Shown piece after piece: positions 5,805 to 57,497 of a stretch of 64,000 nt of DNA (within the stretch, counting starts at the first letter, position 1; the number at the start of each line of letters is the position of its first letter). The notes under the pieces are model-generated. The model saw only the letters and a program-made list of their open reading frames with translations. It had not been told where the DNA came from and did not search any database. The translations under genes were made by a program, and so were the position numbers. The DNA comes from Chlorokybus atmophyticus. Its lineage: Eukaryota; Plantae; Mesostigma and Chlorokybus algae. Where the stretch lies: NCBI GenBank assembly GCA_009103225.1, contig RHPI01002568.1:75742-139741 (forward strand), read 5' to 3'.

Positions 5805-5806
5805 GC

Positions 5807-6039: not shown

Positions 6040-6089
6040 AGCCACCCCCCCTGAGTTTTTGGGAAGGTTCCAGCTCCAGATTTCAGTTG

Positions 6090-14310: not shown

Positions 14311-14412
14311 TGCCATTCTTGCAGCTGACACCCAAGGCTCTGCTACCAACAAGCTACCGTAGTGTAGAACTACTATGCACACAAGCTAGTCTCACACTCC
14401 TCAAGCGTAGTG

Positions 14413-14425
14413 TGAGCCCATAACC
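14413..14425 (-). promoter_or_regulatory. Copia primer-binding site of the internal (half-molecule) initiator tRNA-Met type
   Basis: GGTTATGGGCTCA immediately follows the 5' LTR end; the GGTTATGGGCCC type is established for Drosophila copia, Ty5 and Volvox Osser. Confidence 0.75.
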
Positions 14426-14879
14426 TGTTGAAGGACTAGCATGCACATGTAGTTGAGGCAAGCATGGACACACACGGACAGAGCTACCGCCACCAGAGCA
14501 TACACAAGTCACATCACATTCATCTATTACAAGTTGTCCGCTGGTTCTTATACCAGCCAGTTACACACGTCTACATTTGCAAGCACTGCGTAAGCTATAC
14601 TCAGCCGTTTGACGCGCTCTAAGCTGTGTTGTCTTCCTTCCAACAAGCTCTTACACGTCTAATATAAGTAAGTATACGCGGAGATACAAAGCAGTTCGTA
14701 AGGCTCTAGTTTGGAGTCCGGAGTCTGGTCCGACGACGCCATCTTGCAAGTCCGGACCTAGTGCTCGTCCTTACGACCTTCTATTCTTGTGTGGAGGGTC
14801 GATGCTGATCGTATGTAGGAATACTCTCAACATGGCCTGTAGCCAGTGGTCCAATGGGACCAAGAGGTAGCGTTGGCAA

Positions 14880-16060
14880 CTGCTGGGATGTCCTCCACAA
14901 TGACTGCTGCCTGCTCTTTCATATAGGCGATTTCGAGGGCGGTGTGTGCCGCTTTGGTCTCTTGCACGCGATCGGCCCACCCCGCCGCCAGGTGTTCGAG
15001 CTCTTGAAAAAACACATGGCGGTCCTGAAGAGCAAAGCACATATGCTTTTAATAACCATACCATGCTATTCTAATCCATGGCGCGTCCCACCAGCTGACA
15101 TTGCTGACTGTCGGTCAGCGTGGAACCTGTGATACTGCCTGGAGAGAATCCGATGGCGCGTTCGCGCTCACATGCATTGGATTCCTCCAGTTGGCCTGGG
15201 GTAGAATCCAACACCATGCCGTCGCCGTGGTTGCGGAAGGCGTATGATTCTAAGTAAGACACTAGAGTGGGGAGCGCACGACGTGGTTAACCAGGCTGGT
15301 TGCACTGGTAGAAGTGCTGGTGATCGTGTCGGGTGACTGGTTGTGATGTGCGCCCAGGGTCCATGATAGCGTCGATGGTGAGATCGCGTGGACGGCTGCT
15401 GTTCAGATATTTAACAGCAAAGAGATCCTCGTCGGTAGCCAGGTTGGTCCACTTGGCGCGGACGCGATGAGCACGGGAGCCATGCCGTGCTGCATTGATT
15501 TTGAGAGGATGTCTCATCAAGGAACACACCTGTCAAAAGCTGTTGGCCACGTGATGGCGCTTATCGTCCTCGGAGTGCACATTCTCGGTGATGTATCCCG
15601 GAGGCCTGGACAGCTAGTTGCTCTGCAGGATTTTAATGGCACGCAGCAGTTCTCAGAACAGTTGCGAGCGAAGATCAGCGAGTCCTTGGCCTCTGCCGGC
15701 TCTCGAGTGTCCTTGACACTCCCATTCTGCTATCAACAGGTCGATGTTGCCCACCGCCAGGAGGTGATCCGCAGTGATTAAATGATGTCCTGTGGCAGTG
15801 CCTTCAGACTGCCTTGCAGTGCCGATAGCGGCAATCGCTGCGGGTAGCATTGGTATATGTGGCGCAGGTGGTGGCTCAGGGCCAGCTCGTCGTGCGGATC
15901 AGGGTCACAGTAGAAGTACTTGGTGACCGGCGCGGCGGTGTTGAGGACCGCGGCGAGGCCGCTACGTATACCACTAAACAGTTCCAACACGGTGATGCCT
16001 TGTTGTCGACGGAATACGTGAAACTCCACTACTCGAGTGGCCACCTGGTGTTGCTCCTGG
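14880..16060 (-). pseudogene. DNMT3-like C5 cytosine methyltransferase domain of the decayed gypsy
   Basis: ITVLELFSGIRSGL (motif I), IDLLIAEWECQGHSRAG (IV), NAARHGSRAHRVRAKWTNL (VIII), ERERAIGF (IX), QLVGRAMD (X); stops and frameshifts. Confidence 0.85.
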
Positions 16061-16385
16061 ACCGCAGCTTGGTCCTTGTAGAGAGGGAGCCGTGAAGTGA
16101 GCCGTGGTCTGGTCAGTAGTAGATGTGCGACCACCTGTGTGCGCCAGCGGTGTTCTGGTGGGCCACTTCTTTGGTTGCATTTTTAGACTCGTTGTATGGG
16201 ATAGGAGAGTCTTGGTCAGAGTTGTAGGTGACCACCGCAGCTAATCTGCTGGAAGTTGTCGAAACCGACCTGTGGGTGGCTGTTGCAGCTGACAAGTTAG
16301 TGGTTGTTGACAGCGACCTGTAGGTGGCGGTTGGGGCTGACCTTCGGTGAGAGCGAGTGCGAGCCACCAGCTCGAGAGGCAGATA

Positions 16386-16851
16386 TGTTGAGATTCGGAC
16401 ACTACTGAGCATGCATGGAGTTGGTGCAAGCGCAAGTACACACACTCCAGAGCATACACACAAGGCTGATCCAAAAGGCTTTCTAAGGATTACAACAAAG
16501 TCACACCGCGGGCTTTTATACCCGCCAGTTCTGCACCTGTCTACTCTAGAAGCCACCACGACTTCTACACTCAACCGATTCCTGCGCTCTAAGTTGCACC
16601 ACGTAGCTACTTTCAAGAGCTTTGCAACAAGCTATGACACGCGCCATAAAATGACGTAACCACCGAGCTACAACGTTTCTTCTACAGCGCCTGGAAGTCT
16701 CCAGACTCCGGACTCGACTCCGCGCCTGGAACCTTCTCGACTGAAGTCCTCGCCTGGACCTTTCTCGACTGGAACCTTCTCGCGCCTGAATTTTCTCGCG
16801 GCTATTCTTATCCACAGGGCAAGCTGACCGGATACAAAAATATCCTCAACA
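16386..16851 (-). repeat. Copia-family solo LTR with 5-bp TSD AGATA
   Basis: TG...CA termini with agata on both sides; reverse copy of 729-1197; removing it restores EVQGYLPLELV. Confidence 0.9.
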
Positions 16852-17300
16852 AGATATCCTTGAACCTCTTTATCCTCTTCGTCCCAATGAGGACGAAACC
16901 ATGCCTTCTCTGTCCAGCAGTCCAGCCCCATGCCAACAGGGAAGTTAAAGTCATGTCCCAGCAGCAGGTCGAAGGATTCTGCGTCGGTGACCACACACCT
17001 CTATACGACCTCGGTACTGTGGGAAGGGTCCACTCCTATTAAGCGAATGCAGAGGCTTGCTTGGTGATGCCAATCACCTTGTCACGGCTGCCGGCTGCTG
17101 TGTCGAGCACGTATGGGCACGGCATTAGCTCAGCGCTGGTGATGCCAAGGTCGCGTGCGAGGTAACGTCCGATGATGACGGGTTGGGCTGTAATGTCCAG
17201 CATCACACGCTTGGGTGCTCGTCCATTGAGAGTGACACGCTTGCCTTGGTTGGCAATTATTGCTGCATTGGCGTGGATGCGCAGCCGCTCGAATTGTTGG
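16852..17300 (-). pseudogene. pol: Gypsy aspartic protease (decayed)
   Basis: KRVMLDITAQPVIIG and SFDLLLGHDFNFPVGMGLDCW are homologous to 23747-24150. Confidence 0.85.
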
Positions 17301-17669
17301 TAGCGTGTGCGTGGGGTGACTGCTGCTGCAATCTCCTCCGGTGGTCGAGCGCAGTGCGGCAAGCGCCCTTCAATCAGCTGGGTCTTGAGAACCTTCTGGA
17401 CCGCGGCCTGACCCGAACCGTCCTTGTCTTGGCTGTTGATAAACACACTGTGGCCTGAGTGCTGGCGGTGCTGCCTGTGGCTGCCCTGGTTGTGGTGCAG
17501 GGGGATTGCGCCTTTGTGTGGCCGGGTCCATTCCTGGCGGCATAGGCAGTAGCTGTTGGGGAAACCCTGGAGGACTGAGTGTTTGTGGCTAACCCCCGCA
17601 ACACGCTGATGATCAATGTGGCCATCTTGAACGGAGGCAGGTTGTTGAGCGCGCAGACGTCTTCGCTTC

Positions 17670-18867
17670 TTCCTGTGGGTTTTGTGCCCAAAGATCAGCT
17701 TCACAAGGGGGTGACAACATGTACCCCTTTCTAAAGCCACTTATAGACGAGCTCAAATTACTGCTGCTTGAGGGCTTCACCTGCAATTACGCCCTCCCCA
17801 CCTCTGAAGTTTGCCCTGACCTGCACTCTCAAGCAGTCGGTGCTACCACGCGCTTGCGTGCGATGCTGCTCATCTGGGCTGATGATTACCCAGCCCAGTG
17901 TCAGGTACTAAAGATGAAAGATGGTGGCATCTTGGGCTGCCGTAGATGCTGGTGTAAAGCCCAGCCCTACATGGAAGAAGCCCAAAGGCCTGTAATGCGC
18001 AAGGCTGCTCCAGTGTCCGACGATGAGCAGGTGTCTGCTTGCAAGAAGCTGAAGGCTGTTTCCAAGTTCAGCAGCCAAGCAAAGTCTGCTAGCAGGAATA
18101 AGACGCAGGCGGCTGAGAAGAAGCAGATGAAGAAGAAGGAGAAGCAACCTGCCAGCAAGAAGCGTGCTGCTGCATCAACCAGCAATGGTCCAGCTGGTCC
18201 TAGCAACTCCCAAGCAGTGGAGCTCAACACCTACCAGAAGAAGGTCTACCGCTACGATCACAACTTCATGCACTTAGGACATCCATGGCCCGAGAGAGAA
18301 GAACAGGAGACTCTGACCAACATTGATAAGCTGGAGACTGCTGCTACCCCTGCTATTGGAACACAAATCAGCATGGAGACAGGTGTCATGTTGAGAAGCA
18401 AGCATGCAAGTGAAGAGGGCAAGTAACGACGCGCAGGAGAAGGCAACACAGTTCCCAATTTATTACCAACAGACCGCGGGGTTATATACCCGCCAGTCAG
18501 TACATAGTTTGTACACACTGCTGGTCTACATGCAACAGCGTCCGATATACTGAACCATATCGTACGCTGTAAGATGTGCCACGTAGCTAACTTGATAAGC
18601 TTTGAAACAAGCTATGCCACGTCCTATAAGACTAAGTATCCTAGGAGATATGACGATTCTCCTAGGACCCTTCTCTGCAGTCCGCGCCAGGACCTTCATG
18701 TCCGGAGTCTTCGAGGTCCTCCCATCGAGGTCCCTTCTCTTCTCTCTTGTATGCAGGGCAGGCTGACCGGATGTAGGAATATCTTCAACATGTCACAGGC
18801 AAGAGCCAACTGTGGCGCCTCTACCATGCCTACGGCTTCAGCCCACTCAAGGACGTGGTGTACGATG
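17670..18867 (+). pseudogene. En/Spm(CACTA)/Plavaka-like DDE transposase, 5' part
   Basis: YPFLKPLIDELKLLLLEG, LRAMLLIWADDYPA, GCRRC; reads through to DVVYD after removing the solo LTR at 18389-18790. Confidence 0.65.
18389..18790 (-). repeat. Copia-family solo LTR with 5-bp TSD TGTCA
   Basis: Minus-strand start TGTTGAAGATATTCCTACATCCGGTCAGC; tgtca on both sides; removing it restores METGVTGKSQLW. Confidence 0.88.
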
Positions 18868-19470
18868 TGTCATGCCTATCGCCCAAGCATGCCAGTCGTC
18901 ATCGGGCATGCCTACAGCGAGACCCTCGCCCGGCTTACCAGCATGGCAACCCGCGCGCGCCTCTGACCAGTAGCTAGGTCATGTCCCTAGAGTAGCTCGT
19001 GACCATAGCCTGCATAGGCACCGCGCGTAGCTGTGCAGTTGTGAGTTCAGTTATAAGTCCGGTTCTATATCGAGTGGGCATTTCCTGTGGAAATAGCCTC
19101 AATATAACCGTTAGCTTATGTTCTGGACAGTCATGAGTTGACTTGTATAAGTAGGCACAGTGTTCACCGGATCAGCTGGTGACACTGTAAGTGAGAAAGC
19201 TAAGAGCTTGTGAAGCGACTTGAACTACGAACACAACGTCCTGGTTCCCAAGAATCCCCTCACCGTGTGAGAGCCTGTGCATGTTCTTGTGCACTGTGCT
19301 TGTTCTTGCTGTGAGCTTTGTGTACTTGGTCGCGGTGTGCTCGTTGGCATCAGTCAGGGCATAGCATCCACGTGTTGCTTGCTCATTCATCTCACTGAAC
19401 AGTGTATTCCTCTCCCACTCACGCAAAGAACTGTGTAAACAGCACTACCTATAGTAGTGGCTTGTTGACT
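18868..19470 (+). repeat. 5' terminal repeat B1 (595 bp) plus the first 8 nt of repeat A
   Basis: Near-identical to 29102-29705. Confidence 0.93.
19146..19150 (+). promoter_or_regulatory. Candidate TATA box of the element
   Basis: TGTATAAGTAG is conserved in all three B copies and lies about 30 nt upstream of the self-complementary 15-mer at 19178. Confidence 0.5.
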
Positions 19471-19482
19471 TACAGTGTCACC
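19468..19482 (+). promoter_or_regulatory. Candidate self-priming primer-binding site
   Basis: ACTTACAGTGTCACC is the exact reverse complement of GGTGACACTGTAAGT at 19178-19192; no TGG-initiated tRNA PBS follows the repeat. Confidence 0.65.
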
Positions 19483-19681
19483 CTCTTTGCTCAAGTGAGT
19501 GTAGTTGCAAGCTGTACATCAGCATCGCAATCTGTAGTTGTACACATCACAGTGCAGTGTTGTCACCGTCATCGCATAGCGCGCACAAGCGCTAGTGTGT
19601 TGGGTGATAGCAGCATTAGAGATCCCATTGTAGAACACAAACACTCTACCCTTTATCCACTTTCACCATCGCACCAGCTGT

Positions 19682-22600
19682 ATGAGCAGGCCCACCCCGT
19701 TCTCCCCAATAGACGAGGGTGACCTCAGCAGTTGGAGCCCAACCACCAACCTCACATACGAGCGGACCAGTGACGGGAGCATCAACCGCAGCAGCAGAGG
19801 CCAGCGCTCCATCTCCGGCTTCACCCCGCTCCACTCTACTCCTCGTCATCAAGCTTCTCCACTATCATCGGACAGCGACGACAACAAGATGGAGTCTTCC
19901 AGTTCAACCACATCCCTGCGCTTCTCCGGACGTGCCGGCACCACCTCGCTGGATGAGTTCATCATCAAGTTCCACTCCAAGATGCGGCAGCAAGCTCTGA
20001 AGAACAAAGACTGGTCAGATGAGATCTCTTTCCACATTGCTGCTCAGTATCTTGATTATGAAGCACACGATGTCTGGAAGTCCGTTGCTGAACTGCATCG
20101 AGTAGACGGCTATGGCGAGCTTGCCAGCACCATAGCATCTGCATCGCTGCACCGTCCAACAGGTGTCGTTCCACCTGCCACTTCAGTTGCAGTAACAGGC
20201 TTGTCCATAGCTGCAGCTCTCAAGCAGGCAGAGGAGGAGGAACCGGAGTTGGTACTTGTCAACTTGACCCCTGCAGAAGTTGAGTCCAAGGAGGCCACAC
20301 GTCGAGTCCGCATCCTTGACCGTTCTGCCGTCATCATTGAGGAACAAAAAGCTGCACAGCAAGCGGCAGCCGCAGAGTGGGGTCCTCCTCTACCTCCGGC
20401 AACACCTAGCTCTCGTGCGGGAGGCAGTACCTTCACCCTCGGGTCAGTAGCACTGCGTGCACCAGCCATCTCCGTAGGTGCTGCCATCTCTGATTTGCCA
20501 CTCAAGGATCTGTACGCTGCCCTGCGCCGCACCTTCCCTCCTCAGACCACCAGCAAGGTTGAGGAGCTGAGACGCTTCCGACGCAAGCCCAATGAGGATC
20601 CCCTCCGCTTGTACTCCAGACTGGAAGGTCTGCTAGAGGACACTGATTACAGGATTGTCAGTGAGGAGGCTGCTGCAGTGATATGCGTCAATGAGTTGGA
20701 TGCTGCTCTGAGCGAGTCGACACGCCTGACTCTGAACTACAGCAGGCCCCTTGGCTACACCCTCAAGGAAGCTTTCGAGACTGCAGAAGCCATCCATAAG
20801 CGCGCAGTGTATGAGAAAGCGGTGCTGGACACCAATCGCAGTGCCTCACGGCCTATGGCAGGCACAAGTGCAGAGCCTCCTCGGCGGGACCGCAGCCGGG
20901 AGTCGCAAGGCATCCATTACAAGGATAAACGGTCAGCTCATGCTGCCCTTGTGGCTCCAGTGCTGTGCCACCGGTGTGATCGACATGGCCACTACAAAAA
21001 GGAGTGCACCGAAGATTACGGCAACCTTGTGTGCGACCACTGCCACAAGACGGGACACTTGGAGACAGTATGCTGGCTCAAGTTCCCTGAGCTGCGGCCC
21101 CCTATTGGCTACAACAACAGCAACAACGCTGTTGGCTACCGCGGCCACAACAACCACAACAACAACGGGGGCTACAACAACAGCAACCATGCTGGCGGCC
21201 ACAACAACAGCAACAACGCTGGTGGTCGCAACAACGGCAATTACGCTGGTGGCCACAACCCCAACAACAACAGCAACGCTGGCGCCCGCAAGGAAGAAGC
21301 TGGCTATAGGGGGAAAAACCGCCCTCCACAGCACAAAGGACTTGAGGGACGTCCTCGCGCTGGAGCTGCTGCTGTCAAGGCACCAACCAATCCACCGGCT
21401 ATCGACCAAGTGGCAGCCCTGATGGCGCGCGTGGCACAGCTGGAGGAAAACAAGGAGCAGGACTATCAAGCCTGCTATGCTGCTAGGTGGGCATTGATGG
21501 CACCGAAACGGGATAGGGACACTCCCACGCCGTCACGCGTACAACCATCCAGACGGGCGCGCAGGGAAGCTGGCGCGTCGTCAACAGCGGCATCGTCGGA
21601 CGCCACAAGTGGTGCTGCCTCGGCAGCCACAACCACCGCTGGGACGACGCCGTCGACGACACCGTCGGCGTCCACACCGACTACGACAGCAGGTGTCAGC
21701 ACTCTTGGCACCACGCTGTTCCCGGTGATGGAGAGCACCCACGCCGCAGCAACCATGGTCGTTGGGTTCGTAAGTGGTGAATCCACCACTCCTGCCTCCA
21801 TCGGAGCGACCACATCAACCGCAATTGCTGCCACCCTCACAGCCGCCACTTCAATGACGACGACTGCGGCAGGTGCCACCACCATCGCCTCCAGTAGTGC
21901 TGCCATACCCACCGCACCACTTCCTGAAAGCCGGACGGCACCGCCACCAGCATTGGACGTCACACAGCAAGTGCCACGCGGGCCGCAAGCAGAACGCGCC
22001 TGGGCGTCGATTCTACGCAACGTGGAGCCCACCACTATTGCGTACGGACCAGGGGGGCAACGCACCACGCGCGTGGCACGCGATGATTGCATCTTGCCCC
22101 TACCACCGCCAGAATACCACACGCTGCCAGAACCCACACAACAGCAGCTGGAGGATGAAATCCTCGCCGGCACTGCACCAGAGATGAGGGATCGTCTGTT
22201 CGGGGTCACCTATCGCCGACCTGCGGTGTTGGAACTGGCCATCCAGTTATTCCTGGCATTACATGCACGGTTGCAGGGCGCACCCAGTCAATCGCGACAG
22301 CCCATGCCCGCTCAACAGATTGACTTCGAGCCTTCGCCACTGGACCTACTCGGCCTCCAGCGACACAAACTCCAAGACCTCGTGGTCACGATGTCTGACA
22401 TCGCGCTGGGCGCTGATCCCGCTCTCCGGGGGCTCACTCCAGGCAGTCGTCAAGAGCGTTTTTCTGCACTCGAACAGGCCCATCGGTATCGCATGGACCA
22501 AGCTGCCCAAGTGGACGCGCGCCGACAAGCGTACGAAGCAGCACACGCCGTTATCGTACCAACCGTAGCGCCAGCACATGTTGCCAGCGCCTCCACGGCG

Positions 22601-23737
22601 CCGACCACAGCACACTCCACTGCGATGGCCATCGAGCAGCCGGGACACGCAACTGTTGCAGACCAAGCGAGGGCGTTGGCGCAACAATTGAGGGGAGTAA
22701 TTGCCCCGCTGCTGCCTCCTTTGGTCGAAGACATGCCTGAGGATCAACGCGATGCAGGGCGAGGGTACCTCACCCCGCAAGGGGACACCACACAACGAGG
22801 AGGAGCTGGTATGGTGGGGGAGCAACAACTCCGTACCGCACTCATCCGGCAAGCAGTCATGTTGCACAGGCCTGAGGGCAACACATTAAGACAGATGATG
22901 GGGATGCAAGAGGGCAGCGCCGCGCGAGCTCGTCTCGTGACATGGCTTGTTGCCAATCACCCTGCTGTCCCTCTGTTTGCCTTTGGCAACCGAGCATCAT
23001 GGTTGGGGGCATTCGTTCGTTCGCTGCGACAAGCATACGACGAGGCTGCCACCACAGCCCCGGACACGCTGGAGGGAGTGCAAAAGGCAATGCTTCGGCT
23101 GCCAGGGGTGGAAGCCGCACGGCAACGGCGGCGCATCGCCATTGCTCATGAGCTACACGTACAGCAGACTGACCTCCAGCGCACCCTACGTGCTCGCGCC
23201 ATGACTGTGCTCGATGTGGGAGTGGTACAAGGAAGGTGGGATGCCTACATGGCAGGGATCCTACGAGTCCCCACCATTACTCACGACATGCGGCGACAGC
23301 TGCTACGCGCCGTATACCTGCAGCCCATGCCTCAATATCATCATTGGACCGACACGGACACCGAGCCCACGGCCACGTGGGAAGGGACATTGGTCAGAGA
23401 AGCGGCTCATGCTGTGCGATGGACGTACGCCGCGGAGCAAGCTGAACGCGAGGCAGGCCCACAAACACCGGGTCCACCGGGGTTCCCTCCACAGCCACTG
23501 GGTACGCCCGCGGGCATGATTCCAGCTTCGCAGAGGCGTCATCCACCTGCGCCGCAACCACAACCGGCGCCGGATCCTCCAGCACCGAGGCCCCCCCGTG
23601 TCTACCAACCACCTCGACAAGGTCGGTTCGGCAGAGGGAGAGGGCAAGGAGGGGGTTCTCCGGACCCAGCAGGCAGAGGAGCTCTGGCTGCCATGCGCTC
23701 AGCATCTCCAGCTGAGGCAACTGAGTCAGAGGAATAG
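19682..23737 (+). CDS. gag: Gag-like polyprotein, 1351 aa, with two CCHC zinc knuckles and a long C-terminal extension
   Basis: Open frame; CHRCDRHGHYKKEC and CDHCHKTGHLETVC; lies between the 5' repeat and the protease. Confidence 0.88.
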   Translation: MSRPTPFSPIDEGDLSSWSPTTNLTYERTSDGSINRSSRGQRSISGFTPLHSTPRHQASPLSSDSDDNKMESSSSTTSLRFSGRAGTTSLDEFIIKFHSKMRQQALKNKDWSDEISFHIAAQYLDYEAHDVWKSVAELHRVDGYGELASTIASASLHRPTGVVPPATSVAVTGLSIAAALKQAEEEEPELVLVNLTPAEVESKEATRRVRILDRSAVIIEEQKAAQQAAAAEWGPPLPPATPSSRAGGSTFTLGSVALRAPAISVGAAISDLPLKDLYAALRRTFPPQTTSKVEELRRFRRKPNEDPLRLYSRLEGLLEDTDYRIVSEEAAAVICVNELDAALSESTRLTLNYSRPLGYTLKEAFETAEAIHKRAVYEKAVLDTNRSASRPMAGTSAEPPRRDRSRESQGIHYKDKRSAHAALVAPVLCHRCDRHGHYKKECTEDYGNLVCDHCHKTGHLETVCWLKFPELRPPIGYNNSNNAVGYRGHNNHNNNGGYNNSNHAGGHNNSNNAGGRNNGNYAGGHNPNNNSNAGARKEEAGYRGKNRPPQHKGLEGRPRAGAAAVKAPTNPPAIDQVAALMARVAQLEENKEQDYQACYAARWALMAPKRDRDTPTPSRVQPSRRARREAGASSTAASSDATSGAASAATTTAGTTPSTTPSASTPTTTAGVSTLGTTLFPVMESTHAAATMVVGFVSGESTTPASIGATTSTAIAATLTAATSMTTTAAGATTIASSSAAIPTAPLPESRTAPPPALDVTQQVPRGPQAERAWASILRNVEPTTIAYGPGGQRTTRVARDDCILPLPPPEYHTLPEPTQQQLEDEILAGTAPEMRDRLFGVTYRRPAVLELAIQLFLALHARLQGAPSQSRQPMPAQQIDFEPSPLDLLGLQRHKLQDLVVTMSDIALGADPALRGLTPGSRQERFSALEQAHRYRMDQAAQVDARRQAYEAAHAVIVPTVAPAHVASASTAPTTAHSTAMAIEQPGHATVADQARALAQQLRGVIAPLLPPLVEDMPEDQRDAGRGYLTPQGDTTQRGGAGMVGEQQLRTALIRQAVMLHRPEGNTLRQMMGMQEGSAARARLVTWLVANHPAVPLFAFGNRASWLGAFVRSLRQAYDEAATTAPDTLEGVQKAMLRLPGVEAARQRRRIAIAHELHVQQTDLQRTLRARAMTVLDVGVVQGRWDAYMAGILRVPTITHDMRRQLLRAVYLQPMPQYHHWTDTDTEPTATWEGTLVREAAHAVRWTYAAEQAEREAGPQTPGPPGFPPQPLGTPAGMIPASQRRHPPAPQPQPAPDPPAPRPPRVYQPPRQGRFGRGRGQGGGSPDPAGRGALAAMRSASPAEATESEE

Positions 23738-23746
23738 ACACCTCGC

Positions 23747-24898
23747 ATGAAGAGGCTGCGTATCGACGCCAACGTTGCCATGGTGGCCAACCAAGGCAAG
23801 CACGTTACCATCAACGGTCTGGCACCCAAGCGGGTAATGTTGGACACCGGAGCACAGCCTGTCATCATCGGGCGCTTCCTCGCGCGGTCCCTAGGCATAA
23901 CCAGTTCCGACTTGGTGCCTTGCCCGTACGTGTTGGACACTGCCACAGGTAGCCGAGATAAGGTGATGGGAGTCACCAGGGAGGCCTTTTGCATTCGGTT
24001 GACAGGGCTGGACCCAACCCACACGACCGAGATCGTCCAGCAATGCGTGGTCACCAATGCCGGCTCCTTCGACTTTCTGCTTGGGCAGGATTTCAACTTC
24101 CCTGTGGGCATGGGCCTCGACTGCTGGACAGAACGAGCGTGGTTTCGGCCACATTGGGATGAGGACGACGGAGAGGTACAGGGCTTCCTGCCTCTCGAGT
24201 TGGTCTCGCGCACGCGCGCCCAACGCAAAATGGCTGCCATGGCCACACGCAGACACGCCCGCACCCGGAAGGCTGTAGTGGCCATATACGACGGTGCTCG
24301 GACCATCCCGTACAACGAAGAGCAGGAGGATGCCACCGTGGAAGTAGCATTACAAGACCCAGCTGAACGGCGCTGGCGCGCACAGGTGGACGCACACATC
24401 TTGCTCAGCCACCCACTGATCACCACGCGCTTCCCCAACTACCGAAGCCACGTCAAGGTGCAGGACCACCATATGGTGGCCACCGGAGTGGTGGAATTCC
24501 ACACCTTTCGCAGGCAACAGGGCATCACAGTGTTGGAGCTGTTTGGAGGCATTGGCAGTGGTCTTGCTGCGGTCCTCAACACGGGCGTGAAGGTTACCAA
24601 CTATTACTGCGACCCAAACCCACACGCGCAAACGGGCCTCAAGCACCACTTACGCCAACTGCACACCAGGTATCCACGGCAACTACCCCTCTCGGCGTTG
24701 CAAGGCAGCCTCAAAGCATTGCCACAGGATGTCCGGCTGATCACTGAAGATCACCTACTGTCCCTCGGCAACGTCGACCTGTTAATAGCTGGATGGGAAT
24801 GCCAAGGGCACTCCAGGGCAGGCAAGGGACAAGCTTGTCCCTTAAGCTTGTCCCTTAAGGCCTCGAAAACCCTCGCTCCAGGTTGTTCTGGGAGCTGA
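23747..24898 (+). CDS. pol: Pol N-terminal part: aspartic protease plus DNMT3-like motifs I-IV, ended by a frameshifting 26-bp insertion
   Basis: VMLDTGAQ, FDFLLGQDF, ITVLELFGGIGSGL, VDLLIAGWECQGHSRAG. Confidence 0.88.
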   Translation: MKRLRIDANVAMVANQGKHVTINGLAPKRVMLDTGAQPVIIGRFLARSLGITSSDLVPCPYVLDTATGSRDKVMGVTREAFCIRLTGLDPTHTTEIVQQCVVTNAGSFDFLLGQDFNFPVGMGLDCWTERAWFRPHWDEDDGEVQGFLPLELVSRTRAQRKMAAMATRRHARTRKAVVAIYDGARTIPYNEEQEDATVEVALQDPAERRWRAQVDAHILLSHPLITTRFPNYRSHVKVQDHHMVATGVVEFHTFRRQQGITVLELFGGIGSGLAAVLNTGVKVTNYYCDPNPHAQTGLKHHLRQLHTRYPRQLPLSALQGSLKALPQDVRLITEDHLLSLGNVDLLIAGWECQGHSRAGKGQACPLSLSLKASKTLAPGCSGS

Positions 24899-27800
24899 TG
24901 AGGATCATCCACCTCCTTCAACACCACCAGATCTCCAGACCCCTGGGGTACGTCATCGAAAATGTGCATTCAGAGGACGACAAGCGTCCGCACGTGGCCT
25001 CCAGCTACCGACAAGTTTGCTCCATTCTGGGGCACCCACTCAAGGTGAACGCGGCACGACATGGCTCGCGCGCACATCGTGTACGTGCCAAATGGACAAA
25101 CTTGGCCACCGTGGAGGAGCTCATGACCGCCAAATACACGCGCAGCGCTCGGCCGCGCAACCTGCTGGTCGACGACATCCTTGACCCCGGCCGCACAGCA
25201 CAACCTGTCCTGCATCATAACCACAACCACTTCTACCAGTGCAATCAGCCTGGTCAGCCCCGTCGCGCACTCCCCACATTGGTGTCCTACCCGGGCTCCT
25301 ACGCATTTCGGAACGGTGGTGACGGGATGGTATTTGATGCGACCACCAACACGCTGGAAGAACCCACCGCACGCGAACGTGAACGCGCCATGGGCTTCTT
25401 CCCCAACAGCATCACAGGTTCATTGCTGACAGACAGTCAGCAATGCCAGCTGCTTGGTCGCGCCATGGACCAGAACAGCATGGTATGGCTGCTGGAGCTG
25501 AGCTTCGCGTTGCAGGACCGCCACGTGTCCTTCGAGGATCTCGAACACTTGGCTGGGGGGTGGGCTGATCGCGTAGCCGACACCAAGGCAGCTCACACAG
25601 CTCTCGAGGTGGTCCACATGGAGGAGCAAGCGGCAGTGACAGTGGAGGACATTTCTGTGGTTGCCAATGCAACCTCCTGGGACCATGCCATTGGCCCGGT
25701 GGCCACGGAAGACACTCGAGAGAAGCTGGAGGCTCTCCTCAATAAATGGAGGAGCCAATTCAGCTTCAATGTGAAGGAATTGGGTACATGTTCGGTGTAC
25801 CAGATGGACATCGAGCTAGTGGACACTGAGCCGGTGTTCCGGCGACAATACAGGCTCTCCAAGTTGGAAGAAGACTTGGTGGAACAGAGATGTAAGGCGC
25901 TGCTGGATGCAGGCCTTATCGAAGAGTCCACATCGGACTTCGCAGCAGCAACCGTCATGCCCCTGAAGAAGGATTCAGCAGGCAACTGGACAGAGCGACG
26001 CATGTGTGGCAACTATCGTCCCCTCAACAACAAGACCAAGCAAGACCGGCACCCCATGCCCACAGCAGAGGGTATTTTTGATGATGTAGGAGACTGCACA
26101 GTCTTCAGCATCCTGGACATGCGTCAGGGGTACAACCAGATCGCCATCGAGGACGAGGACAAGCACAAGACCTCCTTCTGGGGCAACCGCCAGTTGTACC
26201 AATGGAAGGTAATGCCGTTCGGGCTGAAGAATGCCCCCGCCAAGTTTCAACGCGTCATGGACAAGGCCTTGAAGGGGTTGGACTGCGCGCGGTGCTACAT
26301 CGATGACATCCTCATCTTCAGCCGCAGCAACGAGGAGCATCTTCAGCACATCGAAGCGGTGCTGGAACGACTCAAGGGAGTGGGGATGACCGTACACCCC
26401 GACAAGTGTACCTTCTTCACCCACAAGGTGCCGTACTTAGGGCACATGATTGTGCCCCATGGTGTGTATGTGCAGCAGGCAAAAGTAGAGGCTCTGGCAG
26501 CTATCCCTGCCCCGACAGACCTCACGCGCCTGCGCGCTTTCTTGGGACTTGCCAACTATTATCGCCGATTCGTGAAGGACTTCGCGAAGATCGCAAGGCC
26601 CCTCAACGAGCTACTGAAAAAGGAGGTGGAGTTCGCGTGGAAGGAGCCGCAACAGCAGGCCTTCGAGGAGCTGAAGAGCAGACTCACCAGCGCTCCCATC
26701 CTTCAACGTCCGGACTACGCCAAGCCTTTCATCCTTCACACCGACTGGAGCAAGCTGGGGATGGGAGCGGTGCTGGTGCAGCACGATGAGCACAAGAAGG
26801 AGCGGGTGGTGGCATACGCCAGCCGAAGCAACAACAGCGCCGAGGCCAACTACAGCAGCTATAAAGGGGAATGCCTCGCTGCAGTGTGGGCCATCTCCTT
26901 CTTCCGACCTTTCCTCTTTGGTCGACAGTTCCAACTGATCACCGATTATCAGCCCCTCAAGTGGCTGATGACCAACCAACATCTGACAGGGAAACTTGCT
27001 CGATGGGCCCTGCTGTTACAGGAATACGACTTCGAGATTGACCACCGCGCTGGCCTCACCAACCAAGACGCCGATGGCCTCAGTCGCAACCCCCACCTCA
27101 GCACCAACGACGCAACTGGAGCGCGGCATGAGCTCATCCCTGCAGCAACAGCTCCCACCATGGCAGCCATGTTTGCTGCTGCCGCGTTGCGCTCAGGGCG
27201 CAAGACCAACACCACGGCCTCAGCAGTGGTAGAGGAGATTCCCGCCCTTGAGTCTACCGACCCTGCGGCAATCACACCCTTGGGAGACGCCCACGCAGCC
27301 GACATTGACGTCGATGACACAGAGCTGGCGTCCACTGACACCAGGCAGGACATATGGCACGACAAGCCATCACTTTCCTTTCTTCAACGTGGCCATCTCC
27401 CCTCTGGCATGAGCGCTCGAAAGAAGGACCGGGTCAACCAACGCACCCGTCACTATCGATGGGCAGGTGACAAGCTGTATCGCCGCTTCCACGACGAAGA
27501 CAAGGAAGTGCCGACACCAGTCACGCGCGAGGACATTATTGCTTCCCTCCACACTGAGCTTGGACACTTTGGTGTCAAGCGCACAGTCAGTTTAGTGAGA
27601 GCACAATATTGGTGGTATGGATTAACAAAACAGGTGCAAAGGTTCGTCAGTCACTGCCAGCAGTGTGACATGGTGCGCGCCAGCCTCAACACGCGTAGCG
27701 CCACCTTGCACCCACTCCCCATCTCCGGTCTCTTTTACCGATGGGGACTCGACATCTTGGGGGACTTGGCACCCTCAGCACGTGGCAACCGTTACATCCT

Positions 27801-28812
27801 GGTCATGATTGAGCACTTCTCCAAATGGGTGGAGCTGGTGCCATTACCCGACAAGAGCAGCAGGGGGGTGTCTCAAGCCTTCCTCTCTCACGTTCTCAGC
27901 CGCTTTGGCAGCTGCGCCGAGGTCATCACCGACCAAGGTACTGAGTTCAGAGGGGAATTCGACACCCTCTTGGACAAATGTTACATCGACCACCGCCGTA
28001 CCTCGCGTGATCACCCTCAAGCCGACGGCCTCGCCGAGCGGACGGTACAGACCATCAAGAAGGCACTCCGCAAATACGTGTTGGAGTACAAGAAGGACAC
28101 TTGGGATGACCACCTTCCATGGGTGGCCCTTGGATATCGGTTGTCAAAACAGGCGACTCTGCGGGAGTACAGCCCGTACTACCTGCTGTTTGGGCGACCA
28201 CCATTGCTCCCCTTCCGTGCGCAACAGGAGGTAAATCGCGTCGTGAACAACCTCGACGACCCTGACTGGATGCACCACGACATCACCACACGCGCCGCAC
28301 TTTTCGAGCGCACCGTCCCCATGGCCTTCAACAATCTGCGCATCGCGCAGCATCGCGACACGCTGCGCTACGAGCGCGTACGTAGCGGCTTTTATAAGGA
28401 GCGCCAACGGCGATTCCAAGCGGGGCACCTTGCCTATCGCATGGCAGCCACCAAAGACACGCTTGACACCTCCGTAGGCCGCACCGTCTACAAGGTACTC
28501 AAAGTGTACCCCACAGGGGTGCTGGACCTCCTTGGTCAAAACGGAGAAAGGTTGAAGGACAACATGGTGAACTGTGCGCCATGTCACCTCCCTTACGTAG
28601 CTGGCTTCGGGCGTATCCAGCACCCTCGTCCTGCGCGCAGCACATGCTGTGAACACTGCGGCAGCGCCGGCGACGACGCACTCATGATGCTCTGCGATGG
28701 CTGCAACAAAGGCCTGCATTGCTATTGCCTGGATCCACCTTTGGACACGATACCTATGGAAGAATATTGGTGCGACGACTGCCGTACCAACGGCCCTCCT
28801 CACTTGCGCTAG
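24883..28812 (+). CDS. pol: Pol C-terminal part: DNMT3-like motifs VI-X, RT, RNase H, integrase, PHD finger
   Basis: YVIENV, AHRVRAKWTNL, RERERAMGF, LLGRAMD; LDMRQGYNQ, PFGLKNAP, YIDD; HTDWS; H-H-C-C zinc finger, WGLD, DQGTEF, GLAER; C4HC3 PHD at 28648-28782. Confidence 0.93.
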   Translation: MFWELMRIIHLLQHHQISRPLGYVIENVHSEDDKRPHVASSYRQVCSILGHPLKVNAARHGSRAHRVRAKWTNLATVEELMTAKYTRSARPRNLLVDDILDPGRTAQPVLHHNHNHFYQCNQPGQPRRALPTLVSYPGSYAFRNGGDGMVFDATTNTLEEPTARERERAMGFFPNSITGSLLTDSQQCQLLGRAMDQNSMVWLLELSFALQDRHVSFEDLEHLAGGWADRVADTKAAHTALEVVHMEEQAAVTVEDISVVANATSWDHAIGPVATEDTREKLEALLNKWRSQFSFNVKELGTCSVYQMDIELVDTEPVFRRQYRLSKLEEDLVEQRCKALLDAGLIEESTSDFAAATVMPLKKDSAGNWTERRMCGNYRPLNNKTKQDRHPMPTAEGIFDDVGDCTVFSILDMRQGYNQIAIEDEDKHKTSFWGNRQLYQWKVMPFGLKNAPAKFQRVMDKALKGLDCARCYIDDILIFSRSNEEHLQHIEAVLERLKGVGMTVHPDKCTFFTHKVPYLGHMIVPHGVYVQQAKVEALAAIPAPTDLTRLRAFLGLANYYRRFVKDFAKIARPLNELLKKEVEFAWKEPQQQAFEELKSRLTSAPILQRPDYAKPFILHTDWSKLGMGAVLVQHDEHKKERVVAYASRSNNSAEANYSSYKGECLAAVWAISFFRPFLFGRQFQLITDYQPLKWLMTNQHLTGKLARWALLLQEYDFEIDHRAGLTNQDADGLSRNPHLSTNDATGARHELIPAATAPTMAAMFAAAALRSGRKTNTTASAVVEEIPALESTDPAAITPLGDAHAADIDVDDTELASTDTRQDIWHDKPSLSFLQRGHLPSGMSARKKDRVNQRTRHYRWAGDKLYRRFHDEDKEVPTPVTREDIIASLHTELGHFGVKRTVSLVRAQYWWYGLTKQVQRFVSHCQQCDMVRASLNTRSATLHPLPISGLFYRWGLDILGDLAPSARGNRYILVMIEHFSKWVELVPLPDKSSRGVSQAFLSHVLSRFGSCAEVITDQGTEFRGEFDTLLDKCYIDHRRTSRDHPQADGLAERTVQTIKKALRKYVLEYKKDTWDDHLPWVALGYRLSKQATLREYSPYYLLFGRPPLLPFRAQQEVNRVVNNLDDPDWMHHDITTRAALFERTVPMAFNNLRIAQHRDTLRYERVRSGFYKERQRRFQAGHLAYRMAATKDTLDTSVGRTVYKVLKVYPTGVLDLLGQNGERLKDNMVNCAPCHLPYVAGFGRIQHPRPARSTCCEHCGSAGDDALMMLCDGCNKGLHCYCLDPPLDTIPMEEYWCDDCRTNGPPHLR

Positions 28813-28849
28813 TAGCTGAGCTCTGGAGCTGGCACCTTCCCCAGAGCCC

Positions 28850-28862
28850 AGGGGGGGGGGCT
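28850..28862 (+). promoter_or_regulatory. Polypurine tract (A-G10) followed by CT and the TG start of repeat A1
   Basis: AGGGGGGGGGGCT-TGTTG; an equivalent tract precedes A1 in the decayed copy. Confidence 0.75.
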
Positions 28863-29099
28863 TGTTGACTCTGTATGCTACGGCACAGCATGTTCTTAGG
28901 GAAAACACCGACTCCATCTGCCCGTACTACCCAGCAGCAGCACCCCAGCTGCACTAAGCACTTGTCACCATGAGGGTGGGAGTCATCTTTCTATTCTTGC
29001 TACGCGTCACCCAGGTGGCGCAGCAGCATGTCCAGCACAGTATGGCTGTCCATGCAGCTGTCCGAGACAGCGTGACCCTCGACTCCCCTCGACCCGACA
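28863..29099 (+). repeat. Terminal repeat A1 (237 bp)
   Basis: TGTTGACT...CCCGACA; near-identical to 29698-29934. Confidence 0.93.
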
Positions 29100-29101
29100 G
29101 C

Positions 29102-29697
29102 TGTCATGCCTATCGCCCAAGCATGCCAGTCGTCATCGGGCATGCCTACAGCGAGACCCTCGCCCGGCTTACCAGCATGGCAACCCGCGAGCGCCTCTGA
29201 CCAGTAGCTAGGTCATGTCCCTAGAGTAGCTCGTGACCATAGCCTGCATAGGCACCGCGCGTAGCTGTGCAATTGTGAGTTCAGTTATAAGTCCGGTTCT
29301 ATACCGAGTGGGCATTTCCTGTGGAAATAGCCTCGATATGACCGTTAGCTTATGTTCTGGACAGTCATGAGTTGACTTGTATAAGTAGGCACAGTGTTCA
29401 CCGGATCAGCTGGTGACACTGTAAGTGAGAAAGCTAAGAGCTTGTGAAGCGACTTGAACTACGAACACAACGTCCTGGTTCCCAAGAATCCCCTCACCGT
29501 GTGAGAGCCTGTGCATGTTCTTGTGCACTGTGCTTGTTCTTGCTATGAGCTTTGTGTACTTGGTCGCGGTGTGCTTGTTGGCATCAGTCAGGGCATAGCA
29601 TCCACATGTTGCTTGCTCATTCACCTCACTTAACAGTGTAATTCCTCTCCCACTCACGCAAAGAACTGTGTAAACAGCACTACCTATAGTAGTGGCT
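29102..29697 (+). repeat. Terminal repeat B2 (596 bp)
   Basis: Near-identical to 18868-19462. Confidence 0.93.
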
Positions 29698-29934
29698 TGT
29701 TGACTCTGTATGCTACGGCACAGCGTGTTCTTAGGGAAAACACTGACTCCATCTGCCCGTACTACCCAGCAGCAGCACCCCAGCTGCACTAAGCACTTGT
29801 CACCATGAGGGTGGAGGTCATCTTTCTATTCTTGCTACGCGTCACCCAGGTGGCGCAGCAGCATGTCCAGCACAGTATGGCTGTCCATGCAGCTATCCGA
29901 GACAGCGTGACCCTCGACTCCCCTCGACCCGACA
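29698..29934 (+). repeat. Terminal repeat A2 (237 bp), the right end of the element
   Basis: Near-identical to A1; followed by the TSD GATG. Confidence 0.93.
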
Positions 29935-31300
29935 GATGTCATGCACACCTTGTGTGAAGGTCTAGTGAAGGGCCTCTGCCATGCAGTTTTTGCCAAGGGA
30001 GCGCATGAAAGGGTGGTGGATGTTCCCTTGGTGGAGGCCAGGCTTAAGGACTTCACTGCAGATTGGATCAAGGAAATGCGATCCGGGCGCTCTCCAAAGG
30101 GGATTACAGACAGGCTGGGCTGGTGGAGAAGGCAGAAGACTACCAGAAGTTGATGCATGACTTTGCACCTTATGTGACAACGGGCTTGCTGACTTCGCAC
30201 ATGCGCGACGTCTTCATGTCCTTACACAAGCTCATCTGCCAGTTCTATCGCCACTCCCGCTTCAATGGCTGGACCGAGCCTCAGACACCCTCAGACTAGC
30301 AGGCAGCTTACTGCGTTACTGGCGTATCAACTCAGAAGAATGCTTTGGCCACAACTTGAGACCTCTAGAGCATGCTGGAGCAAGTCATTTGCTGGACGAC
30401 ATCTTCCGCCACGACAGCCATGATGTGTACTGGTGCTACGTCTTCGAGCGCGCTATCTCAGATCACTTGAAGACCAGCACCAACAACAAAGAGTATGAGT
30501 TCAGCTACATACATCGCCACGTACGCTTGTGGTATGAGCGGCTGCTTACTGTCTTGCACGAAGACCAGCGCACGGGCATGGTCTTTGCAACACGCGTTCA
30601 CCTGCAGTTGCGGTCCCATCGCGTGTCCAGCGGTGTTGGAGGTTTCTGGTACGAAGCGCCCAGCCAAAGCAAGGCTTTGGAACTCTGGAAAAAGGCTGAG
30701 ACGTGTCCACACCGGTCTGATTCACAAGACATTTTTGCGCGAGGCATACTTATTGGCCAGCTGCCAGGTCAACCCACACCACTAAGCTAAAAACGGTTTA
30801 TGATGGTCAGCAGGCACATCAGAGCAGATGCTAGGCATCTCGTGCAGAATATGGCTTACCGCTATAAGGCTGTGCTGCTTAATGGTGAGATTCACAGGTA
30901 AGATCGCTTGCTATTGTTGTCCTCACACGTGCTGTTGTGCTTGCTGTCTGATTGCTACCAAGCTTTGTGTTCTACTGTGCAGAATAGAGTCGCCCTTAGG
31001 CATTGACAACGTTGTAACGGACGACCACAGTTACATTGCTGTGAAGCAAGTATTTGTGCATATCTATAAGAAGAAGCCTCAAGTCTTCATTGCTGGTCGC
31101 CAATATGTCATGTACACAGACACAGCTGGTGCCTTGTACCGTGACCTTGATACAAGGTCGAGCTCCGACAAAGCCTACTCATCAATTCTGACATAGCTTG
31201 ACTGGATTGCATGTGTGCAGACGCAACACATTTGAAAAATTGGTCGCTATTAATGCCATTTATGAGGATGACTGCATGCAAGCAGAGTGGGATCCTGCAA
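29935..31300 (+). pseudogene. En/Spm(CACTA)/Plavaka-like transposase, 3' part (frameshifts, probable intron)
   Basis: DVMHTLCEG, KAEDYQKL, HLLDDI...VYWCYVFERAI; GTAAG...TGCAG intron-like segment near 30898-30981. The end is approximate. Confidence 0.6.
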
Positions 31301-57447: not shown

Positions 57448-57497
57448 TCCGACGTCTACTTGCAGCGTCGTATAGTTGTTTGGGGTAGTGCTATTCT

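What the first reader, a model, noticed from the sequence alone, without database searches (positions are those of the whole stretch)
18868..29934. Integrase-encoding gypsy element with split direct repeats instead of LTRs
The layout is TSD-[B 595 bp + 8 nt of A]-gag-pol-PPT-[A 237]-GC-[B 596]-[A 237]-TSD. This topology is established for PAT/TOC1/Ngaro tyrosine-recombinase retroelements. This element instead has a DDE integrase, TG...CA ends, a PPT and a clean 4-bp TSD whose removal restores the host gene. The integrated ends are the start of B and the end of A, not the ends of the PPT-defined LTR, so a standard linear-cDNA integration cannot produce this structure. I do not know of this combination being described, but could not search the literature.
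Basis: partly seen in the sequence, partly recalled or inferred. Interest (0 to 1): 0.92.

Follow-up and report, generated by a model that had tools for sequence, protein, structure and literature searches.

The report
Gypsy retrotransposon with permuted terminal repeats
This is an intact-looking 11-kb Ty3/gypsy retrotransposon whose terminal repeats are circularly permuted (B-genes-A-B-A). It belongs to a widespread plant and algal lineage whose integrase must cut at a junction inside the repeat, not at its ends; one 2018 figure legend noted the layout, but nobody has explained it.

Summary
Window 18868-29934 reads TSD(GATG)-B1-gag-PR-RT/RH/IN-PHD-polyG PPT-A1-GC-B2-A2-TSD(GATG), with TG...CA ends, an intact D,D35E integrase and no tyrosine recombinase.

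It is not a one-off. A second, about 80%-identical copy in the window has the same PPT-A-GC-B-A tail. So do more than 30 related loci, including Klebsormidium nitens, the liverwort Calypogeia fissa and many metagenome contigs. Eight of these copies have perfect 4-bp TSDs.

New here:
- The 11-19 nt just after B1 are complementary to a site in B about 30 nt below a TATA box. This is Tf1-type self-priming, seen in 8 divergent families.
- The reverse-transcription LTR is therefore A-NN-B.
- The integrase ends (TGTCATG.../...CATGACA) abut at a CA-NN-TG junction inside that LTR.
- The U5 end must therefore be joined to the U3 start (circle junction or equivalent), and integration must use the internal junction.

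About 40% of copies are B-int-A derivatives. The reciprocal permutation was never seen, so the joining step is asymmetric and unexplained.

The combination was noted once before (de Mendoza 2018, KnitGypsy-Dnmt3, figure legend), without a mechanism. Verdict: a new member of a barely described kind, with an interesting open mechanism.

The parts
18864..18867 (+). Left copy of the 4-bp target-site duplication, GATG
   Evidence: The same 4 nt follow the element at 29935-29938. Removing the element plus one GATG restores a 101-aa ORF.
18868..19470 (+). B1, the 5' repeat. It starts TGTCATGC (an integrase-type TG end). It holds a TATAAG box at 19146-19151, the predicted transcript start and self-primer GGTGACACTGTAAGT at 19178-19192, and R-U5 down to 19470. 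Its last 12 nt, GGCTTGTTGACT, are shared with the start of A.
   Evidence: 98.2% identical to B2.
19468..19482 (+). Self-priming primer-binding site ACTTACAGTGTCACC, complementary to 19178-19192 inside B1
   Evidence: a 15-nt perfect complement that 0 of 300 shuffles reach. The same arrangement occurs in 7 other families.
19682..23737 (+). gag-like ORF of 1351 aa. It has two CCHC zinc knuckles (aa 429 and 451) and a 27-nt repeat block (21107-21275) encoding an N/G/Y-rich stretch. It ends in an in-frame stop before PR.
   Evidence: (no Pfam hit).
23747..24898 (+). Aspartyl protease ORF, in the same frame as gag. It overlaps pol with a -1 frame relation.
24883..28812 (+). pol ORF with RT (aa 372-523), RNase H (586-715), integrase H2C2 (881-933), the rve core (953-1044; D957, D1017, E1052) and a PHD finger (1256-1300)
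28843..28860 (+). Polypurine tract AGAGCCCAGGGGGGGGGG, with a 10-G run directly abutting A1
   Evidence: A G-run in the same place occurs in copy 2 and in all related loci.
28859..29099 (+). A1, the internal copy of repeat A (5' part of U3). It ends ...CCCGACA.
29095..29106 (+). Internal junction GACA-GC-TGTC. The integrase-type CA end of A abuts the TG end of B, separated by 2 nt. It is a 10-nt palindrome and looks like an LTR-LTR circle junction.
   Evidence: CA-NN-TG is conserved in copy 2 and in every related locus, with NN = GC, AC, GT, AT or TC.
29102..29705 (+). B2, the 3' copy of repeat B
29694..29934 (+). A2, the terminal copy of repeat A. It is joined to B2 through the shared 12-mer and ends in the CA terminus.
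29935..29938 (+). Right copy of the target-site duplication, GATG
4487..17600 (-). Copy 2 of the same lineage: about 80% nt identity, degenerate, 5' end missing. Reading on the minus strand: G-run near 6050, A 6045-5807, GC 5806-5805, B 5804-5168, A 5181-4487. The terminal A carries a roughly 450-bp insertion at 4599-5047. A Copia element is nested at 9940-14832.

Best explanation
The element is a young, apparently coding-competent Ty3/gypsy (Metaviridae-type) retrotransposon. It belongs to a streptophyte-wide lineage whose integrated copies are circularly permuted relative to their reverse-transcription product.

Shown by sequence:
1. Transcription is predicted to start inside B, about 32 nt below a TATA box.
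2. The first 11-19 nt of that transcript are complementary to the sequence immediately 3' of B1. This is a Tf1-type self-primed PBS, so U5 ends at the end of B.
3. A poly-G PPT abuts A1, so U3 starts at A.
4. The LTR that reverse transcriptase would build is therefore A-NN-B.
5. The sequences a DDE integrase uses (TGTCATG... and ...CATGACA inverted ends, flanked by 4-bp TSDs in the genome) lie back to back at a CA-NN-TG junction in the middle of that LTR.

Inferred:
1. The cDNA's U5 end becomes joined to its U3 start, which creates the B2|A2 join anew in each cycle. This could happen by a two-LTR circle, by a template jump, or by end-joining helped by short terminal homology (12 nt in the window family, 0-2 nt elsewhere).
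2. The integrase cuts after CA on both strands of the PBS-proximal junction, discards NN as a retroviral integrase discards its terminal dinucleotide, and inserts the opened molecule with a 4-bp stagger. The result is B-int-A-NN-B-A.
3. A2 has no replicative role and is a by-product. B2 supplies the 3' R needed for the next round.
4. B-int-A copies are dead-end derivatives.
For: Layout and coding capacity.

The same PPT-A-CA-NN-TG-B-A tail occurs in:
- the diverged second window copy;
- contigs of pol relatives L001 and L003 and L002;
- about 25 metagenome loci;
- K. nitens L084 and Calypogeia fissa L086;
- distant L088 and L089.

Perfect 4-bp TSDs flank the whole unit in the window (GATG), L022 (CCAA), L038 (ACCT), L058 (CATA), L084 (TCTT) and L086 (GTCA). 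They also flank the B-int-A copies L025 (TTTT) and L070 (ATGG).

A PBS-to-transcript-start complementarity of 11-19 nt is found in 8 sequence-unrelated families. It always lies directly after B1 and about 30 nt below a TATA-like box, and 0 of 300 shuffles reach it in each case.

A1/A2 and B1/B2 have the same divergence (about 2%), as expected if all four arose in one event.

The B2|A2 join varies by 0-2 nt among closely related copies, whereas PPT|A1 and the 2-nt NN spacing are constant. This fits a join remade in every cycle.

All SDR-bearing loci fall in one pol clade (160 tips, support 0.97). Its sister clade representative, L087, shows a single ordinary LTR pair.
Against: - No extrachromosomal form was observed. 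The only circle-like contig (L002, two perfect tandem A-GC-B units with a 400-bp terminal overlap) could be a coverage-driven assembler cycle.
- Random opening of a symmetric two-LTR circle predicts the reciprocal product B-A-NN-B-int-A in about half of insertions. None was seen among about 20 loci with 5' coverage. A simple circle model is therefore incomplete.
- The transcript start, the poly(A) site and the integrase's ability to cut an internal junction are all inferred, not measured.
- Several older copies lack recognisable TSDs (L003, L014, L018).
- In L003, B1 covers only the first 702 bp of B2.
Confidence: 0.75

Rival explanations
1. Same lineage and same RT-defined LTR, but no covalent circle forms. 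Either the integrase cuts one internal junction of the linear cDNA and host end-joining then ligates the two free cDNA termini. Or the plus strand jumps from the U5 end to the U3 start and extends only the right end by A-NN before normal end processing.
For: The reciprocal permutation is absent, which favours an asymmetric process such as a right-end-only extension. B2|A2 joins show 0-2 nt microhomology variants and a 12-nt terminal redundancy in the window family. Both are typical of template jumps or microhomology joining.
Against: One-site cleavage of a linear molecule is as symmetric as opening a circle, so by itself it does not explain the asymmetry. There is no direct evidence for either intermediate.
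Confidence: 0.2
2. A one-off rearrangement: an ordinary LTR element with a solo LTR or a second element inserted beside it, or an internal duplication specific to this locus.
For: Nested TEs are common in this window.
Against: The same layout occurs in a second diverged copy and in more than 30 loci from at least 8 families and two named species. A single TSD flanks the whole unit, the A and B pairs are of equal age, and there is no extra TSD at the A1/B2 or B2/A2 boundaries.
Confidence: 0.02
3. A tyrosine-recombinase (DIRS/PAT/Ngaro/TOC-type) retroelement that merely lies next to, or has captured, a gypsy pol.
For: The repeat topology is that of split-direct-repeat YR elements.
Against: No YR domain occurs in any ORF. 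The pol order is PR-RT-RH-IN with an intact D,D35E triad. The ends are TG..CA with 4-bp TSDs, which YR elements lack. The pol is nested among Ty3/gypsy sequences.
Confidence: 0.01
4. An assembly artefact: mis-joined or duplicated repeat copies.
For: Repeats are error-prone in assemblies, and L002 may be such a product.
Against: A1/A2 and B1/B2 differ at about 2% of sites, so they are distinct copies. The same layout appears in independent assemblies, including a chromosome-scale liverwort genome and the K. nitens reference.
Confidence: 0.02

Closest known systems
KnitGypsy-Dnmt3 of Klebsormidium nitens (de Mendoza et al. 2018, PMC5890265)
   Same: Gypsy-type pol combined with a DIRS-like A/B repeat arrangement. 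K. nitens elements fall in the same pol clade. A K. nitens locus examined here (L084) has the identical B-int-A-GC-B-A layout with a TSD.
   Different: The window element has no DNA-methyltransferase domain and comes from a different, unidentified host, with pol only about 40-46% identical. The paper gives a single legend sentence, with no termini, TSD, PBS/PPT or mechanism.
[quoted passage not shown]
   Same: The same repeat topology. The same logical need for a junction (B1A2 there, A1-NN-B2 here) that equals the joined termini.
   Different: Those elements encode a tyrosine recombinase, make no TSDs and lack TG..CA ends. This one has a DDE integrase, 4-bp TSDs, a PPT and a self-primed PBS.
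Tf1/sushi-type self-priming Ty3/gypsy elements (named from my own knowledge; Levin 1995-96)
   Same: The PBS is complementary to the first nucleotides of the element's own transcript rather than to a tRNA.
   Different: Tf1-type elements have ordinary identical LTRs, whose ends are the integrase ends.
IS3/IS911-family bacterial insertion sequences (copy-out-paste-in through a circle with abutted ends; named from my own knowledge)
   Same: A DDE enzyme related to retroviral integrases uses a circle junction, with the two ends separated by a few bp, as its integration substrate.
   Different: These are bacterial DNA transposons. There is no reverse transcription, and the junction is not kept inside a terminal repeat.
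Retroviral two-LTR circles and cleavage of their palindromic junction by integrase (PFV, HIV-1; Panganiban-Temin model; named from my own knowledge, with reviews found)
   Same: A CA-NN(NN)-TG palindromic LTR-LTR junction that integrase can recognise.
   Different: In retroviruses this is a side pathway or dead end, and the integrated provirus has ordinary LTRs. Here the junction is a permanent, inherited part of the LTR and appears obligatory.

Membership tests
Ty3/gypsy (Metaviridae) LTR retrotransposons | gag with a zinc knuckle, and pol ordered PR-RT-RNaseH-IN with an H2C2 plus D,D35E integrase | tested here: met
Ty3/gypsy (Metaviridae) LTR retrotransposons | pol groups with Ty3/gypsy sequences in a tree | tested here: met
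   The element is nested among gypsy-type pols of algae, bryophytes, angiosperms and arthropods. No curated GyDB reference set was available.
Ty3/gypsy (Metaviridae) LTR retrotransposons | Two identical long terminal repeats whose outer ends are the integrase ends, with the PBS directly after the 5' LTR and the PPT directly before the 3' LTR | tested here: not met
   The terminal blocks differ (B at the 5' end, A-GC-B-A at the 3' end). The PPT/PBS-defined LTR (A-NN-B) is offset from the TG..CA termini.
Ty3/gypsy (Metaviridae) LTR retrotransposons | TG..CA termini and a 4-6 bp target-site duplication | tested here: met
   Eight perfect 4-bp TSDs across the lineage.
DIRS order (DIRS/PAT/Ngaro/VIPER) | Encodes a tyrosine recombinase instead of a DDE integrase | tested here: not met
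DIRS order (DIRS/PAT/Ngaro/VIPER) | Split direct repeats (A1-int-B1-A2-B2) or ITRs plus an ICR | tested here: met
   Literature definition.
DIRS order (DIRS/PAT/Ngaro/VIPER) | No target-site duplication | tested here: not met
   The GATG TSD, and TSDs in relatives.
KnitGypsy-type lineage (gypsy pol with DIRS-like repeats) | Gypsy domain composition together with an A/B split-repeat layout | tested here: met
   Literature.
KnitGypsy-type lineage (gypsy pol with DIRS-like repeats) | pol shares a clade with the K. nitens elements | tested here: met
   a clade of 160 tips with support 0.97 that includes K. nitens P0057, P0083 and P0086.
KnitGypsy-type lineage (gypsy pol with DIRS-like repeats) | A Dnmt3-type cytosine methyltransferase domain in the polyprotein | tested here: not met
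   No PF00145 hit in the window element. The domain is present in relatives L001, L003 and L086.
Self-priming (Tf1-type) retrotransposons | The PBS is complementary to the 5' end of the element's own RNA | tested here: inconclusive
   Complementarity to a site about 30 nt below a TATA box occurs in 8 families. The transcript start itself was not measured.

The most novel reading that the evidence does not exclude
A whole lineage of DDE-integrase LTR retrotransposons, spanning charophyte algae to bryophytes, obligatorily integrates through an LTR-LTR-type junction carried inside its LTR. It does so from a circular or end-joined cDNA rather than from the ends of a linear cDNA. This would be a natural, obligate version of the long-abandoned circle-junction integration model. 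It would also be a plausible structural stepping stone between gypsy elements and the tyrosine-recombinase (DIRS/PAT/Ngaro) retroelements.
Probability: 0.5. Interest if true: 0.85.

Novelty: new member of a known kind. Interest (0 to 1): 0.65.

Why it matters
Textbook LTR retrotransposons and retroviruses integrate a linear cDNA by its LTR ends, and two-LTR circles are regarded as dead ends. This lineage keeps the integrase recognition ends back to back inside the LTR, so its integrated form can only arise if the cDNA ends are first joined. If confirmed, this would have three consequences:
- It would be a natural system for studying junction-based integration by a retroviral-type integrase.
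- It would show how split direct repeats can evolve without a tyrosine recombinase, which bears on the proposed origin of DIRS-like elements from gypsy RT/RH.
- LTR-finding software that expects two identical terminal repeats will mis-annotate these elements in algal and bryophyte genomes, both the full form and the repeat-less B-int-A form.

The young, DNMT- and PHD-bearing copies in Calypogeia fissa and K. nitens give experimentally tractable hosts.

Tried and rejected
- tRNA-primed PBS: no tRNA gene is in the window, and the sequence after B1 does not start with TGG. Self-priming complementarity explains it better.
- Tyrosine recombinase or any other Pfam domain in the remaining ORFs of the element: none.
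- Adjacent solo-LTR or nested-insertion explanation: rejected by the survey.
- Microhomology crossover between the circle junction and the target's TGTCATGC-like sequence: rejected. The left junction carries the full GATG plus TGTCATGC, as a 4-bp staggered cut predicts.
- L002 as direct evidence of a two-LTR circle: set aside as a possible assembler cycle.
- Closterium locus L085: its repeats were too tangled to classify.
- L089: it shows B...A-GC-B but no second A.
- Nine literature searches found no description beyond the 2018 legend. Repbase, Dfam and GyDB could not be searched.
- The host organism was not identified. The best pol hits are only about 54% identical.
- The 5' end of copy 2 was not found in the window.
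Full report
OBSERVATION. Repeat finding and pairwise alignment confirm the layout at the stated coordinates.
- B1 18868-19470 and B2 29102-29705 are 98.2% identical over 604 nt.
- A1 28859-29099 and A2 29694-29934 are about 97.9% identical.
- 'GC' at 29100-29101 separates A1 from B2.
- B2 runs into A2 through a 12-mer, GGCTTGTTGACT. The same 12-mer ends B1 and starts A1.
- The unit starts TGTCATGC, ends CCCGACA, and is flanked by GATG on both sides.
- A run of ten G lies directly in front of A1.

The internal region has three ORFs.
- A 1351-aa gag-like ORF has two CCHC knuckles.
- A protease ORF follows in the same frame, after an in-frame stop.
- A -1-frame pol has RT, RNase H, an H2C2 and rve integrase (D957, D1017, E1052) and a C-terminal PHD finger.

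No ORF in the element carries a tyrosine-recombinase domain. Removing the element and one GATG restores a 101-aa ORF. That ORF belongs to a tnp2/CACTA-like transposase remnant, so the 'host gene' is another transposon.

NOT A ONE-OFF. The window holds a second copy of the lineage on the minus strand (4487 to about 17600). It is about 80% identical, degenerate, 5'-truncated, and carries a nested Copia element. Its 3' end reads G-run, A, GC, B, A and ends ...CCCGACA, exactly like copy 1.

The closest pol homologues are only about 54% identical. They come from metagenomes, Closterium, Klebsormidium and a liverwort. Contigs of these relatives show the same tail.
- L001, L002 and L003.
- About 25 of the loci fetched from metagenome contigs.
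- K. nitens DF237474 (L084) and Calypogeia fissa chromosome contig (L086).
- Two members of a distant clade with a pol of about 2200 aa (L088, L089).

Several features are constant across these loci.
- The A/B junction is always an integrase-type CA end and a TG end separated by two nucleotides (GC, AC, GT, AT or TC), with short inverted repeats (TGTCATG.../...CATGACA).
- A G-rich PPT always abuts A1.
- B2 always runs directly into A2.

Perfect 4-bp duplications flank the whole unit in the window copy (GATG), L022 (CCAA), L038 (ACCT), L058 (CATA), L084 (TCTT) and L086 (GTCA). Older copies have near-matches or none.

In a FastTree of the RT-to-IN region, all loci with this layout fall in one clade (160 tips, support 0.97). 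A member of the sister clade (L087) shows a single ordinary 1120-bp LTR pair. Angiosperm and arthropod gypsy pols lie outside.

WHERE REVERSE TRANSCRIPTION STARTS AND STOPS. The sequence immediately 3' of B1 is not tRNA-like, and no tRNA gene is in the window. Instead, it is complementary to a site inside B that lies about 30 nt downstream of a TATA-like box.
- Window copy: ACTTACAGTGTCACC (19468-19482) pairs with GGTGACACTGTAAGT (19178-19192), with TATAAG at 19146.
- Other families with unrelated sequences show the same arrangement: L002 (16 nt), L003 (15 nt), the moss-metagenome family (11-16 nt in four of its loci), L058 (11 nt), K. nitens (19 nt), C. fissa (12 nt) and L089 (14 nt).
- In each case 0 of 300 shuffles reach the observed length.

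This is the signature of Tf1-type self-priming, a mechanism I name from my own knowledge. It implies that the transcript starts inside B and that U5 ends at the end of B. Together with the PPT in front of A, the LTR that reverse transcriptase builds must be A-NN-B. The integrase ends lie back to back in the middle of this LTR.

MECHANISM (inference). A standard linear cDNA would be A-NN-B-int-A-NN-B. The genomic form B-int-A-NN-B-A is a circular permutation of that molecule, opened at the junction in the PBS-proximal LTR. The U5 end must therefore be joined to the U3 start, and the integrase must cut after CA on both strands of the internal junction. That cut leaves 2-nt 5' overhangs, exactly like processed retroviral ends, and a 4-bp staggered strand transfer follows.

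The B2|A2 join is not transcribed, so it must be remade in every cycle. Among closely related moss-family copies it varies (CAAT|ATACATG, CAAT|ACATG and other variants), while PPT|A1 and the 2-nt NN spacing are constant. In the window family the two cDNA termini share 12 nt, and the join contains a single copy of them. That points to annealing or a template jump rather than blunt ligation. A1/A2 and B1/B2 are equally diverged, as one event predicts.

COMPLICATIONS. About 21 moss-family loci end pol-PPT-A|flank, which is the B-int-A form. Two of them have perfect TSDs (L025 TTTT, L070 ATGG). They are interleaved with full copies in the tree. They are therefore derivatives, formed in one of two ways.
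- Later recombination between A1 and A2.
- Integrase using both internal sites of a linear cDNA, or the single site of a one-LTR circle.

A B-int-A copy lacks a 3' R and should be unable to replicate.

The reciprocal permutation, B-A-NN-B-int-A, is what random opening of a symmetric two-LTR circle predicts in half of the events. It was not seen in any of about 20 loci with 5' coverage. The joining or cutting step is therefore asymmetric, and I cannot say why.

L002 looks exactly like a two-LTR circle: two perfect tandem A-GC-B units, then the PBS, with a 400-bp contig-end overlap. It may, however, be an assembler cycle that matches the two-fold coverage of A and B, so I do not count it as evidence.

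COMPARISON WITH WHAT IS KNOWN. Split direct repeats define PAT-, Ngaro- and VIPER-like tyrosine-recombinase elements. This element fails their other defining features, because it has no YR and does have TSDs. It meets the protein and TSD criteria of Ty3/gypsy but not the 'two identical LTRs' criterion.

Nine full-text searches found one prior mention of the combination. De Mendoza et al. 2018 (PMC5890265) state in the legend of Fig. [quoted passage not shown] They give no analysis of termini, TSDs, priming sites or mechanism, and I found no follow-up.

The window element lacks the DNMT domain. Relatives with the same layout carry it (L001, L003 and L086).

Functionally, the nearest analogues are the circle-junction integration of IS3/IS911-type DDE transposases and the side reaction in which retroviral integrases cut the palindromic two-LTR junction. 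Both comparisons are from my own knowledge.

VERDICT. The structural interpretation is right, and here it is extended to a lineage-wide architecture with a self-priming PBS. The claim of complete novelty is weakened by the 2018 note. The finding is a new member of a barely described kind. Its replication and integration mechanism is open and unusually interesting.

Noticed in passing
window 4487-17600 (- strand): A second, degenerate copy of the same lineage. It holds a nested Copia-type element with an ordinary LTR pair (9940-10365 / 14424-14832; RVT_2 ORF 10408-11880). Its terminal A carries a roughly 450-bp insert (4599-5047) with related copies at 16506-16830 and 750-1074, possibly a small non-autonomous element.
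   Followed up: partly
window 17593-18867 and 29939-30790 (+ strand): The target of the insertion is a tnp2/CACTA-like transposase remnant (weak PF02992 match, with a D.MH...G..K-type motif across the empty site).
   Followed up: partly
window 29935-29944: The TSD plus the right flank read GATGTCATGC. The flank therefore mimics the first 8 nt of the element (TGTCATGC). This could be chance or a target preference. Other copies do not show it.
   Followed up: partly
window 31699-32340 and 57498-63211 (+ strand): Further reverse-transcriptase ORFs (RVT_1). The 830-aa ORF at 60719-63211 follows a 950-aa ORF and a 123-bp x3 tandem repeat (57094-57462), which suggests another retroelement.
   Followed up: no
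window 49931-50230 / 56135-56434 and 35772-36070 / 49201-49499: A pair of direct repeats at least 300 bp long and 100% identical, 6.2 kb apart (possibly a very young LTR element), and an 89%-identical pair 13.4 kb apart.
   Followed up: no
window 42001-44000: An AT-rich island (GC 0.34, against about 0.52 elsewhere) with overlapping ORFs on both strands.
   Followed up: no
L002 1-16815 (ENA ERZ28573575 scaffold_8219): A circular-looking contig with a 400-bp terminal overlap. It consists of one internal region plus two perfect tandem A-GC-B units followed by the self-priming PBS. This is the predicted two-LTR circle, or an assembler cycle.
   Followed up: partly
L004, L012, L016, L023, L025-L027, L029, L031, L035, L037, L049, L051, L052, L056, L065-L067, L069, L070, L076: Repeat-less B-int-A copies of the moss-metagenome family, some with TSDs, make up about 40% of the sampled loci. 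The reciprocal permutation B-A-NN-B-int-A is absent.
   Followed up: partly
L086 3782-13709 (Calypogeia fissa GCA_965154635.1): A very young copy (repeats 99.4-100% identical, TSD GTCA) with a DNA-methyltransferase domain upstream of pol and a PHD finger after the integrase. It is a good candidate for an active element.
   Followed up: partly
window 21107-21275: The gag ORF contains a 27-nt repeat block encoding an N/G/Y-rich low-complexity stretch.
   Followed up: no
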